Of a stretch of DNA of 30,340 bases, positions 1,899 to 18,594 are shown one piece after another. Numbering within the stretch: position 1 is the first letter of the stretch; each line of letters starts with the position of its first letter. The notes beneath the pieces were generated by a model. That model ran no database searches. It worked only from the letters and a program-made list of their open reading frames with translations, and had not been told where the DNA came from. The stretch lies in the sequence record BK067783.1. One strand, given 5' to 3'. The position numbers were made by a program, and so were the translations under genes.

Positions 1899-1985
1899 AC
1901 TGAATGGTTGACAAGCCTTCCAGGAAAATGTAGTGTTGGCGATCTAGTTATACCAACCCCATATCTAGATCGTCAATTCTTTTTA
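1899..1985 (+). ncRNA. Candidate small RNA A
   Basis: TATA TTTAATAA at 1869 (+30 = 1899); no + strand ORF; 12-bp stem 1936-1947/1965-1976 with one G-U pair; followed by a T tract. Confidence 0.5.
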
Positions 1986-2825: not shown

Positions 2826-3055
2826 TTTGACAAATTCACCGAACCGTCTTTGAGAAGGTTACTTAAAACTTCTTTAACCCAATGATTAGGAATAGAGCCT
2901 TCTACATCCATTGAATCAACCAGTGTATTTAATTTAGATACAATTTTTTGATTTCTTAGAATATCATTCATCTCTGTTTCTGTAACATCTAATTGATAAA
3001 ACCAAGTGCCTACACTCGCACCTGTTTTTTCAAATCTTTCTCTATCTAAAGTCAT
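2822..3055 (-). CDS. Hypothetical protein
   Basis: ORF track; preceded by AAGGAG SD-like motif. Confidence 0.7.
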   Translation of the reverse strand: MTLDRERFEKTGASVGTWFYQLDVTETEMNDILRNQKIVSKLNTLVDSMDVEGSIPNHWVKEVLSNLLKDGSVNLSK

Positions 3056-3082
3056 TCTCTCGGACTCTCCTTTTGAAATGTA

Positions 3083-3149
3083 ATGAGGGCTTGGGGTTTC
3101 GAACCCCTTTGTCCCATCAGGGAAATGTCGCCAACACTACCGCCCTCAT
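3083..3149 (-). ncRNA. tRNA-like cloverleaf element (not a canonical tRNA)
   Basis: 8-bp closing stem AUGAGGGC/GCCCUCAU; D-like arm AGUGU-UGGCG-ACAUU; short UCCC-UGAU-GGGA arm; T-arm GGGG-UUCGAAA-CCCC. Lies in the largest gap of the operon. Confidence 0.55.
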
Positions 3150-3181
3150 CTAAACCGTTGTTATCTTTTGTTGACGAGGAT

Positions 3182-3556
3182 TTAGCACTCATGGTAATAA
3201 CTCCTTAGACTTCTAACACCTTTTGAGTTTTTATGCAGAAAGTGAATGTTTCTTATATCAGTCCAAATGAACTGCATATCTAACCACCATTCTTCGGGAT
3301 GTTCATCTATAAATTTGAGATAACTTTCTTCTGTCATTATCTCCTTTGTCTTTGGATGAGGCTTCTTTTGGTCTATATCTTCCTGAGCCATTTCTGGAAC
3401 TTTTCTCCAACCATGATTATTTATCATGTGTTCCATTATTGATTTAGGAGTGTTTATCATTTCTCCACCACATTCTATTAATGCTAAATTGCATACTAGT
3501 ATTGATCTTGGATTCAATCTATCAGGCACTTCCAGACCGTTTGTTGTAGATGTCAT
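3182..3556 (-). CDS. Hypothetical protein
   Basis: ORF track; ATGA-coupled. Confidence 0.7.
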   Translation of the reverse strand: MTSTTNGLEVPDRLNPRSILVCNLALIECGGEMINTPKSIMEHMINNHGWRKVPEMAQEDIDQKKPHPKTKEIMTEESYLKFIDEHPEEWWLDMQFIWTDIRNIHFLHKNSKGVRSLRSYYHEC

Positions 3557-17698: not shown

Positions 17699-17956
17699 AT
17701 GCCTTACAAGTTCAAAGACACTGAGAACGCAAAGATACCAATGAAAAGGCTTTGGTTATTCCTGTGTGGGTTAAGCTTGTTCCTGTCAGGATTTGATATT
17801 ATTTATGGAAAATATACTATGTATGATCTAGGAGCTATACCCATGTCTGTATTTGGAATTTGGGCTTTACAATTTCATGGATGGTACAAGATAGAAAGAT
17901 ACTTGATGGAATGGAAAATGAAACGTAGATCAAAGTTTGATTACTATCATACCTAA
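17699..17956 (+). CDS. Small two-TM membrane protein
   Basis: Hydrophobic segments; start uncertain (17699 or a later ATG). Confidence 0.6.
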   Translation: MPYKFKDTENAKIPMKRLWLFLCGLSLFLSGFDIIYGKYTMYDLGAIPMSVFGIWALQFHGWYKIERYLMEWKMKRRSKFDYYHT

Positions 17957-18594
17957 TCAACTTCTTTAGATAGTGCTTCTGCTTCTGCTTCATCATAATT
18001 ACGTGTACCTTCTTTACCAAGATCTAGATAATCTATTGTTTGTGCAAATCTGTTATTTCCTTTGTGTCCTAGCCTTGCAGATACAGAACCAATATCCGCT
18101 TTGATACCTGATAAAGTACCATAGTACATATCCTTCCCTCTAGACTTTCTCATAGCATGAGTAACAGTTTTTTGTTTAGTAACAGAAGTAGGAGTATTGA
18201 AAGCTAAGATATTTAATTTCTTGCCTAACCTCTTACACCAATCATAGACTATTGCATAATTCATACCGGGAAATAACGCACCTGACTTATCTTTCAAATA
18301 CTCTTTGAGTTCTGGAATAAAGATTTTAGGCACAAGTCTTTGATCATTATCTTCTGTTTTGGTCTTACCTAAATAACAAATACCTAATACCAAATCAAAG
18401 CTATCCATAGTAAGTTTCAATGTTTCATTTATTCGTAAAGCCAACCAGTAAGTTATCTTGAACATCATAATAACATCAGAGTCTTTCCACTTTCGTATCT
18501 TTAAGCTAGGTATTACATCCAACATTTGTATGAACTTTGTATAAGGAATCCAAGAAGATGTCTCTTTATTCTGCCAAGTCTCATCATGCTTCAT
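17953..18594 (-). CDS. int: Tyrosine recombinase/integrase, catalytic domain only
   Basis: ALRINE (R), KTK (K), HAMR (HxxR), LGH (H), TIDY (Y). Confidence 0.9.
   Translation of the reverse strand: MKHDETWQNKETSSWIPYTKFIQMLDVIPSLKIRKWKDSDVIMMFKITYWLALRINETLKLTMDSFDLVLGICYLGKTKTEDNDQRLVPKIFIPELKEYLKDKSGALFPGMNYAIVYDWCKRLGKKLNILAFNTPTSVTKQKTVTHAMRKSRGKDMYYGTLSGIKADIGSVSARLGHKGNNRFAQTIDYLDLGKEGTRNYDEAEAEALSKEVD

What the first reader, a model, noticed from the sequence alone, without database searches (positions are those of the whole stretch)
3083..3149. tRNA mimic embedded in a polycistronic early operon
Seen: the leftward operon 6301 to 1965 is a near-continuous chain of overlapping or abutting ORFs, except a 126-nt gap. 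That gap folds (minus strand) into a cloverleaf with an 8-bp acceptor-like stem, a D-like arm with GG, and a GGGG-UUCGAAA-CCCC T-arm. The anticodon arm has only a 4-nt loop and there is no CCA. Known: RNase P and RNase Z recognise the acceptor/T-arm. Inference: an mRNA processing signal, a decoy for tRNA-targeting defence or modification enzymes, or a relic attP.
Basis: partly seen in the sequence, partly recalled or inferred. Interest (0 to 1): 0.65.

Follow-up and report, generated by a model that had tools for sequence, protein, structure and literature searches.

The report
Mobile tRNA-shaped module inside small ORF
A 67-letter stretch in this virus of soil ammonia-oxidising archaea folds like a tRNA without a proper anticodon arm. 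It is a discrete piece of DNA that also occurs, 95% identical, in unrelated mobile elements, so it looks like a transferable tRNA mimic rather than a tRNA gene, a host-tRNA docking site or a chance fold.

Summary
The cloverleaf is real, at window 3082-3148 on the minus strand. It has a 7-bp acceptor-like stem, a D-like arm with GG, a 4-bp/4-nt mini arm and a GGGG-UUCGAAA-CCCC T arm. It is the most GC-rich and most stable 67-nt stretch of the genome.

The "126-nt gap" is not a gap. GenBank BK067783.1 annotates it as ORF8 (3052..3192, 46 aa), an orphan that bridges ORF9 and ORF7.

ARAGORN and Rfam do not call the element a tRNA. No host tRNA matches it in 185,579 species genomes or 401 Nitrososphaeria genomes, so the attP reading is not supported.

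New here: the same 67 nt occur 64/67 identical in an unrelated contig (L024), and with 3 differences in a third context (run X2). Both have unrelated flanks. Close relatives of both known contexts have empty sites.
- In L024 the element follows a tyrosine-recombinase gene, and a 15-nt junction duplication flanks the insert.
- Two of the three WIN/L024 differences form a compensatory pair in the mini stem (chance about 0.006-0.009).

Best reading (about 0.4): a horizontally mobile, tRNA-derived module acting in the operon transcript as a tRNA-like "t-element" for RNase P/RNase Z. Processing is untested. The main rivals are a selfish mini DNA element, a recombination site and a bridging micro-ORF.

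The parts
3082..3148 (-). Conserved 67-nt tRNA-shaped module (element position i = window 3149-i)
   Evidence: Cloverleaf MFE -28.4 kcal/mol. 64/67 identical copy in L024 1934-2000(-) with unrelated flanks. A 151-nt contig of run X2 matches exactly 3082-3148 with 3 differences and unlike flanks. Top GC and top stability in the genome.
3142..3148 (-). 5' strand of the 7-bp acceptor-like stem (UGAGGGC)
   Evidence: Pairs with 3084-3090. Invariant in both copies.
3084..3090 (-). 3' strand of the acceptor-like stem (GCCCUCA). 3082-3083 (UU) is a conserved tail in the discriminator position.
   Evidence: The UU is shared by all three contexts, while the base 5' of the stem differs (A/U/G).
3124..3138 (-). 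Arm 1: D-like arm (AGUGU-UGGCG-ACAUU). It can also be read as a 4-bp stem with the 7-nt loop UUGGCGA.
   Evidence: In WIN this arm forms only on the minus (sense) strand. The covariance model aligns it to the anticodon arm of host tRNA-Ser.
3112..3123 (-). Arm 2: mini stem-loop UCCC-UGAU-GGGA. The pair 3121/3114 changes C:G to U:A in L024.
   Evidence: Compensatory change. Chance 0.006-0.009 given 3 substitutions.
3093..3107 (-). T-arm-like hairpin GGGG-UUCGAAA-CCCC
   Evidence: The pattern GGGGTTCGAANCCCCNNGCCCTC hits the 3' ends of true bacterial tRNAs.
3052..3192 (-). ORF8 (46 aa), annotated CDS that contains the element. It is a 'bridging' ORF coupled to ORF9 (11-nt overlap, AGGAG) and to ORF7 (ATGA).
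   Evidence: No homologue in 5.8e9 clusters or 1.84e9 representatives.
3155..3192 (-). Start of ORF8, homologous to the start of a 52-aa Cys-rich small ORF in relative L012 (MSKSSPTK against MSAKSSSTK)
3056..3084 (-). Conserved junction ATTACATTTCAAAAGGAGAGTCCG... before ORF7. It is shared with the empty site of relative L007 and with a variant contig in the source sample.
1930..1942 (+). 13-nt perfect complement of arm 1 (3128-3140), lying in the small-RNA region at the operon end

Best explanation
Window 3082-3148 (minus strand) is a discrete, horizontally transferred module of 67 nt derived from, or shaped like, a tRNA.

Anatomy:
- a 7-bp acceptor stem
- a D-like arm with GG
- a T arm with a canonical T loop
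- a stunted middle arm that cannot carry an anticodon

How it got there: it was inserted in frame into a small bridging ORF (ORF8) of the leftward operon and is co-transcribed with it.

Most likely mechanism (inferred, not shown): the tRNA-like fold forms in the polycistronic RNA, and the host's tRNA-end enzymes recognise it. RNase P would cut just 5' of the acceptor stem, 5' of 3148 or of 3147 depending on the register. RNase Z would cut just 3' of the discriminator position (3084/3083). This would work like the t-elements of Haloferax and of plant mitochondria.

Expected result: ORF9-side and ORF7-side mRNAs are separated, and/or a small stable anticodon-less tRNA-like RNA of about 65 nt is released.

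Shown: the fold, its outlier status, its conservation with one compensatory pair, its insertion/mobility, the lack of tRNA-gene status, and the lack of a host tRNA match.
Inferred: transcription through the element, cleavage, and any benefit.
For: - Fold and outlier status.
- T-arm/acceptor pattern equals the 3' end of real tRNAs.
- A second copy (64/67 identical) and a third context, both with unrelated flanks.
- Empty sites in close relatives of both known contexts: L007 for the window; L029 and L026 for L024.
- Compensatory C:G to U:A in arm 2, with all 20 pairs kept. P = 0.006-0.009 by simulation, against 0.17-0.22 for the coding-neutral pattern.
- In WIN the full four-way fold forms only on the sense strand. 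In L024 the antisense strand forms a different, extended hairpin in place of arms 1 and 2.
- Sense orientation between co-directional genes in both contexts with known genes.
- No consistent own promoter or terminator, read from the sequences.
- RNase P RNA and RNase Z are present in Nitrososphaeria genomes.
- Archaeal RNase Z cuts pre-tRNAs lacking the D, T or anticodon arm but needs the acceptor stem (PMC7479834).
- t-elements are cut by RNase P and tRNase Z in an archaeon (PMC4326828).
Against: - There is no RNA evidence at all. No RNA run holds the stretch, and only contigs could be laid.
- Only 2-3 copies are known, so there is one informative covariation.
- The element's single open frame is embedded in a short ORF in all three contexts, with stops overlapping the next start. 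This fits selection for translation through it, which would compete with cleavage.
- Two unpaired A's lie between the T stem and the acceptor stem, and the T stem has only 4 bp. This departs from the 12-bp coaxial helix the enzymes measure.
- The 15-nt junction duplication in L024 is a DNA-level signature. It needs no RNA function.
Confidence: 0.4

Rival explanations
1. Selfish miniature mobile DNA element (MITE/REP-like, tRNA-derived) with 7-bp terminal inverted repeats TGAGGGC/GCCCTCA. It is moved in trans by a transposase, casposase or recombinase. The fold is a by-product, and only insertions that keep operon translation intact survive.
For: - Sharp shared boundaries in three contexts.
- Filled and empty sites.
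- A 15-nt imperfect direct repeat (13/15) flanks the 80-nt insert in L024. This size resembles thaumarchaeal target duplications and att sites (median 17 bp; PMC6563490).
- In-frame embedding in bridging ORFs.
Against: - No flanking duplication in the window.
- One copy per contig, and no copy in 401 Nitrososphaeria genomes, in IMG/VR or in phage records.
- The TIRs are only 7 bp.
- The conserved ends are asymmetric: 0 nt on the 5' side and UU on the 3' side.
- The compensatory change lies in an internal arm, which a TIR-based element does not need.
Confidence: 0.22
2. Recombination (att-type) site, or a decayed captured tRNA next to an integrase. In L024 it would be the attP-side relic of a tyrosine recombinase. 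The window's copy would be a scar of recombination with such an element.
For: - In L024 the element starts 7 nt after the stop of P0017.
- P0017's model (pLDDT 86) matches XerA, Tn1549 Int, XerH, Cre and lambda Int. R242, R400 and Y433 are invariant and H423 is nearly invariant.
- The P0017 family sits in Nitrosopumilus and Nitrosarchaeum chromosomes.
- Thaumarchaeal elements mostly target the 3' parts of tRNA genes (PMC6563490).
- The window virus has an integrase with no known att site.
Against: - No archaeal tRNA matches. The genome scan gave only bacterial hits.
- 401 Nitrososphaeria genomes gave only short chance matches. None of those checked lie in a tRNA gene apart from one 11-nt flank match beside a tRNA-Leu.
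- The source paper also found no tRNA match (PMC10866085).
- Relatives L026 and L029 of the recombinase operon lack the element, so it is a recent insertion there.
- In the window it lies 15 kb from the integrase.
- The AA bulge and the mismatches would not fit a working tRNA target.
Confidence: 0.1
3. ORF8 is the functional product: a micro-protein, or simply a translated bridge that couples ORF9 to ORF7. The conserved 22-residue core EGGSVGDISLMGQRGSKPQALI is what is selected, and the fold is incidental.
For: - Good RBS, ATGA coupling and a GenBank CDS.
- The same frame is open, with a start 4-15 codons upstream, in all three contexts, and ends on the next gene's start in WIN and L024.
- 2 of the 3 differences are synonymous.
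- L007 keeps a 15-codon bridge with the same C-terminus.
Against: - No homologue among 5.8e9 clusters or 1.84e9 representatives. The only hit is a tandem-repeat artefact.
- The N- and C-termini differ completely between contexts.
- The substitution pattern is weak evidence for coding (P about 0.2) against P < 0.01 for structure.
- A chance peptide would not explain a canonical T arm in a 4-way junction, or the GC and stability outlier.
- The antisense frame is open too.
Confidence: 0.12
4. Neutral decaying tRNA pseudogene, or an unusual decoding tRNA (D-armless, class-II-like, anticodon GGC).
For: - In the register G(3147)...A(3084) the element reads as a tRNA with mismatches at 7:66 and 49:65 and a shortened anticodon arm.
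- The covariance model aligns it to host tRNA-Ser(GCU) minus the D arm at 20-25 bits.
- ARAGORN at 80% threshold proposes Ala-GGC.
Against: - The low-threshold ARAGORN calls differ between the two copies and use non-conserved flanks.
- No G3:U70. No tRNA model score.
- 95% identity across unrelated elements, with sharp edges, argues against passive decay.
Confidence: 0.08

Closest known systems
t-elements: tRNA-like structures used as processing signals (upstream of 5S rRNA in Haloferax volcanii; plant mitochondrial mRNAs)
   Same: Both are tRNA-shaped folds with an acceptor stem and a T arm, embedded in a longer transcript, non-decoding and without CCA. In Haloferax such elements are cut by RNase P and tRNase Z (PMC4326828).
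   Different: Processing is not shown here. This element lies inside an ORF of a viral operon, is mobile between unrelated elements, and has a 2-nt AA bulge between the T and acceptor stems. No sequence homology was tested.
mascRNA/menRNA tRNA-like small RNAs (Rfam RF01684)
   Same: Same architecture: acceptor stem, D-like arm, reduced anticodon arm and T arm, cut out of a long transcript by RNase P/Z. It was the best structured Rfam hit.
   Different: Score is 11 bits against a gathering score of 42.5 (E 6), so it is not a member. That family is eukaryotic and nuclear, with no relation implied.
tRNA-derived attP sites of archaeal integrative elements
   Same: tRNA-like sequence. In L024 it lies directly after a tyrosine-recombinase gene.
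   Different: No match to any sampled host tRNA. It keeps both acceptor strands. It is far from the integrase in the window. It is absent from relatives of the L024 operon.
MITE/REP-type miniature mobile elements
   Same: Short, with discrete ends, terminal inverted repeats and filled against empty sites. One copy has a flanking 15-nt duplication.
   Different: Only 67 nt with 7-bp repeats. It is single-copy. No host-genome copies were found. Internal covariation and tRNA motifs are present.
Canonical tRNA genes, including class II tRNA-Ser(GCU) of Nitrososphaeria
   Same: 7-bp acceptor, T loop UUCGAAA, GG loop. Arm 2 resembles the long variable arm UCUC-UUAC-GAGA.
   Different: It fails ARAGORN and RF00005. 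One arm is missing or stunted. There are mismatches at 7:66 and 49:65 in the tRNA register.

Membership tests
tRNA gene (Rfam RF00005 / ARAGORN) | Scores at or above the tRNA covariance-model threshold (29 bits), or is called by ARAGORN at default settings | tested here: not met
   ARAGORN found 0 genes. There was no RF00005 match at E<=10 in the 451-nt or 81-nt searches or in the whole virus genome. Low-threshold ARAGORN calls are inconsistent between the copies.
tRNA gene (Rfam RF00005 / ARAGORN) | 5-bp anticodon stem with a 7-nt loop, together with a D arm | tested here: not met
   The middle arm is 4 bp with a 4-nt loop. If arm 1 is read as the anticodon arm instead, the D arm is missing.
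tRNA gene (Rfam RF00005 / ARAGORN) | 7-bp acceptor stem and a T arm with the loop UUCRANN closed by G:C | tested here: met
   UGAGGGC/GCCCUCA and GGGG-UUCGAAA-CCCC. The T stem has 4 bp rather than 5.
t-element / tRNA-like processing signal | tRNA-like fold embedded in a longer transcript, in sense orientation | tested here: inconclusive
   The element lies in sense orientation between co-directional, abutting genes in the window and in L024, and no consistent promoter or terminator is seen. Transcription itself was not observed.
t-element / tRNA-like processing signal | Cleavage by RNase P and RNase Z at the ends of the fold | not testable with these tools
   No RNA runs are available, and contigs cannot show RNA ends.
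t-element / tRNA-like processing signal | Host encodes RNase P and RNase Z | tested here: met
   RF00373 scored above its cut-off in 3 of 3 Nitrososphaeria genomes, and TIGR02651 in 2 of 3.
mascRNA-menRNA (RF01684) | Reaches the family gathering score | tested here: not met
   11 bits against 42.5, E 6.1.
tRNA-derived attP | Identity to a segment of a host tRNA gene | tested here: not met
   The 185,579-species scan gave 5 bacterial hits only. 401 Nitrososphaeria genomes gave only matches of 41 nt or less at chance level. One 11-nt match to the 3' flank (not the element) lies beside a tRNA-Leu gene. None of the other 34 loci checked is in a tRNA gene. Unsampled hosts remain possible.
tRNA-derived attP | Lies next to the integrase gene | tested here: inconclusive
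   In the window the integrase is 15 kb away, at 17953-18594. In L024 the element starts 7 nt after a tyrosine-recombinase gene, but relatives of that operon lack it.
MITE/miniature insertion element | Discrete ends with filled and empty sites | tested here: met
MITE/miniature insertion element | Target-site duplication at each insertion | tested here: inconclusive
   L024 has a 15-nt direct repeat, 13/15 identical. The window has none.
MITE/miniature insertion element | Multiple copies in a genome | tested here: not met
   Each contig has a single copy. No copy was found in 401 host-class genomes.
Protein-coding gene (ORF8) | Homologous proteins exist | tested here: not met
   (with 100: the only hit is a repeat artefact).
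Self-cleaving ribozymes / C/D box sRNA | Match to an Rfam model | tested here: not met
   No ribozyme family matched at E<=10. sR48 scored 15 bits on the other strand, E 4. The CUGAUGAG...CGAAAC motif in the L024 copy lacks a stem II (read).

The most novel reading that the evidence does not exclude
A tRNA-mimic RNA cassette that moves horizontally between unrelated mobile elements of ammonia-oxidising archaea (a spindle-shaped virus, an integrase-bearing element and a third context). It inserts at gene junctions of operons. The host's RNase P and RNase Z cut it out of the mRNA to give a stable, anticodon-less tRNA-like small RNA. That RNA would serve the carrier, either by punctuating the operon or by acting as a decoy for tRNA-directed host enzymes or defences. 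It may be controlled by the 13-nt complementary small RNA at 1930-1942.
Probability: 0.18. Interest if true: 0.8.

Novelty: new variant of a known kind. Interest (0 to 1): 0.55.

Why it matters
tRNA-like processing signals are known from organelles, eukaryotic long non-coding RNAs and one haloarchaeal rRNA operon. To my knowledge, and from the searches made here, none has been reported in an archaeal virus operon, and none as a unit shared nearly unchanged between unrelated mobile elements.

If the element is processed, it would show how compact archaeal virus operons are punctuated. It would also provide a natural, portable 67-nt RNA-processing tag for ammonia-oxidising archaea, which have no genetic tools.

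If instead it is a selfish mini-element, it would be among the smallest mobile DNAs seen in archaea. It would also show that insertions into translationally coupled operons survive by keeping a bridging reading frame.

Either way, ORF8 of BK067783.1 should not be taken as an ordinary protein gene.

Tried and rejected
1. True tRNA: rejected. ARAGORN at 80% threshold gives 'Ala-GGC' in the window and 'Ile|His' in L024, using non-conserved flanks.
2. attP copy of a host tRNA:
   - The genome scan gave only bacterial hits.
   - BLAST of 401 Nitrososphaeria genomes gave only chance-level short matches. One 11-nt flank match lies beside a tRNA-Leu gene, and none of the other 34 loci checked are in tRNA genes.
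   - An apparent third-codon pattern in some of these hits proved to be unrelated proteins.
3. Conservation at the same place in relatives: 14 homologues of ORF9 were fetched, and none has the element downstream.
4. Other copies:
   - IMG/VR was scanned with both halves, 0 hits.
   - Phage GenBank holds only the virus's own two records.
   - The covariance model R1 found nothing on 18 held loci.
   - On 151 + 41 host-class genomes R1 found only tRNA-Ser(GCU), at 20-25 bits.
5. ORF8 homologues: none. P0086 is a 13-fold tandem-repeat artefact.
6. Neighbour searches with ORF9 or ORF7 alone in IMG/VR found nothing.
7. RNA evidence: no RNA run holds the stretch, and read laying used contigs only.
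8. Hammerhead or C/D-box reading of CUGAUGAG/CGAAAC in the L024 copy: no stem II and no Rfam match.
9. Integron attC reading: the ends lack the RYYYAAC/GTTRRRY cores (read from the sequence).
10. BLASTP of P0017 against the window's integrase: no similarity.
11. PHROGs and NCBIfam gave nothing for P0017, until the fold search identified it.

Full report
**What the window is.** The window is GenBank BK067783.1, 'Nitrosopumilaceae spindle-shaped virus isolate NTT2'. It is a 30.3-kb complete genome from a rhizosphere metagenome, described in PMC10866085. The leftward operon ORF18 to ORF3 is a chain of abutting small genes.

**The observation.**
- The minus strand of 3083-3149 folds as a four-way junction (-28.9 kcal/mol, z -3.4).
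- Scanning the whole genome, this is the most GC-rich 67-nt window (0.55 against a mean of 0.33, sd 0.055). It is also the most stable 67-nt fold on either strand.
- The "126-nt gap", however, is an annotated CDS. ORF8 (3192..3052, 46 codons) has AGGAG 8 nt before its ATG. It overlaps the end of ORF9 by 11 nt and ends in ATGA on the start of ORF7.

**Not a tRNA gene.**
- ARAGORN finds nothing.
- Rfam finds nothing at gathering scores. It finds no tRNA match at E<=10 in 451 nt, in 81 nt or in the whole virus.
- The best structured hit is mascRNA-menRNA at 11 bits (E 6), which is not significant.
- Low-threshold ARAGORN calls differ between copies and lean on flanks.
- The tRNA likeness is still specific. 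The pattern GGGGTTCGAANCCCCNNGCCCTC occurs in 185,579 species genomes only five times. Three of these are the 3' ends of true bacterial tRNAs.
- In the register G3147...A3084 the element reads as a tRNA with these departures:
  - G at position 8
  - a 4-bp D stem with a 7-nt GG loop
  - a shortened anticodon arm
  - mismatches at 7:66 and 49:65
- Alternatively, my covariance model aligns it to host tRNA-Ser(GCU) without its D arm (20-25 bits). In that alignment arm 2 matches the long variable arm. I cannot decide between the two registers.

**Not a copy of a sampled host tRNA.**
- None of the five genome hits is archaeal.
- BLAST of the element against 401 genomes of the host class gave only short matches at chance level. 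One 11-nt match to the 3' flank lies beside a tRNA-Leu gene. None of the other 34 loci checked is in a tRNA gene.
- The source paper also reports no tRNA match.

**A discrete, shared module.**
- Fourteen homologues of ORF9 were found, at 56-78% identity. Their contigs were read, and none has the element.
- The closest one, L007, goes from the stop codon through TCTG straight to ATTACATTTCAAAAGGA..GTCCG. This is window 3084-3061. The window therefore carries about 93 extra nt.
- The first 12 codons of ORF8 match the start of a 52-aa Cys-rich small ORF in L012. L007 keeps a 15-codon bridge, MNISLITFQKDCPHE*, that equals the ORF8 C-terminus. So ORF8 is a chimera: an old start, then the insert, then the old bridge end.
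- Laying contigs showed a soil run from another study (X2) with a 151-nt contig that matches only 3082-3148, with 3 differences and unlike flanks. A variant in the source sample joins ORF10-like sequence directly to 3081-3052.
- A scan of JGI metagenomes found L024. There the same 67 nt (64/67 identical) lie between a 450-aa gene and a 130-aa gene on the same strand.
- In relatives L029 and L026 these two genes overlap (TGATG/TAATG) with no element. In L024 the junction GAGGTTGTnTTTnTGA is duplicated on both sides of an 80-nt insert.
- The 450-aa protein (P0017) is a tyrosine recombinase:
  - Its model (pLDDT 86) matches XerA, Tn1549 Int, XerH, Cre and lambda Int.
  - R242, R400 and Y433 are invariant and H423 is nearly invariant.
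  - Its family sits in Nitrosopumilus and Nitrosarchaeum chromosomes.
- No other part of L024 resembles the window.

**RNA structure or peptide?**
- The three differences between the copies are C28U plus G35A, and A41C. The first two turn a C:G pair of arm 2 into U:A. A41C is unpaired. All 20 pairs are kept.
- With three random substitutions this pattern has P = 0.006-0.009.
- In the ORF8 frame the same changes are synonymous, Gly>Arg and synonymous. One or fewer amino-acid changes has P = 0.17-0.22.
- Both copies give the same cloverleaf on the sense strand. In the window, arm 1 does not form on the other strand.
- ORF8 has no homologue in 5.8e9 clusters or 1.84e9 representatives.
- Against a pure RNA reading: the element's one open frame sits in a short ORF in all three contexts. 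Starts lie 4-15 codons upstream. In the window and in L024 the stop overlaps the next gene's start. So translation through the element seems to be kept, or at least only such insertions survive.

**Mechanism.**
- Host-class genomes have RNase P RNA and RNase Z.
- In Haloferax, tRNA-like t-elements are cut by RNase P and tRNase Z (PMC4326828).
- I therefore favour a transferable t-element-like module, at about 0.4. The rivals are:
  - a selfish mini DNA element (0.22)
  - a translated bridge or micro-protein (0.12)
  - an att-type site or relic (0.1)
  - a decaying or odd tRNA (0.08)
- Nothing here shows cleavage. No RNA data exist for this stretch.

**Side observation.** Arm 1 (3128-3140) has a perfect 13-nt complement at 1930-1942, in the small-RNA region at the operon end. 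It is preceded by a similar flank. L024 has no such partner.

Noticed in passing
window 1930-1942 and 3128-3140: There is a perfect 13-nt inverted repeat between arm 1 of the element and the structured small-RNA region at the end of the operon. On one transcript strand the two would pair. Both are preceded on the + strand by a similar ~15-nt flank (CCTTCCAGGAAAATG / CCCATCAGGGAAATG). I estimate the chance expectation at about 0.05 or less. L024 has no such partner.
   Followed up: partly
L024 2008-3360 (-), protein P0017: A 450-aa family without any Pfam, PHROG or NCBIfam hit is a tyrosine recombinase by predicted fold (XerA, Tn1549 Int, Cre), with invariant R242, R400 and Y433 and nearly invariant H423. 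It has 68 relatives, including in Nitrosopumilus and Nitrosarchaeum chromosomes next to housekeeping genes. It is probably the integrase of an undescribed class of thaumarchaeal integrated elements.
   Followed up: partly
window 3056-3084; L007 837-870; X1 variant contig: The junction ATTACATTTCAAAAGGA..GTCCG before ORF7 is identical over 17 nt in a relative whose flanking genes differ. It also marks the breakpoint of a variant lacking ORF9 plus the element. The operon looks like a mosaic of cassettes exchanged at conserved junctions.
   Followed up: partly
window 3182-3556 (-), ORF9 (P0002): ORF9 belongs to a conserved family of 113-134 aa with invariant C22, C29, H43, H48 and a WW..D..W..RN.HFLH motif. 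It has no annotation in PHROGs. In relatives it is always followed by a variable small ORF starting at an overlapping ATG, often Cys-rich.
   Followed up: partly
L024 1913-1927 and 2008-2022: A 15-nt direct repeat (13/15) covers the last codons and the stop of the recombinase gene and flanks the 80-nt insert. A nested ATTACAT/ATTATAT repeat abuts the element on each side. ATTACAT is also the native sequence at the empty site of L007.
   Followed up: partly
protein P0086 (from the representative search): This 1175-aa 'protein' is made of 13 identical 90-residue repeats. It scored E 5e-13 against ORF8 only by summing weak repeats. It looks like a translated tandem DNA repeat, not a relative.
   Followed up: yes
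L024 1966-1973 (-) within the element copy: The G35A change creates CUGAUGAG followed 12 nt later by CGAAAC, which are the letters of a hammerhead core. However, no stem II can form and no Rfam ribozyme model matches.
   Followed up: yes
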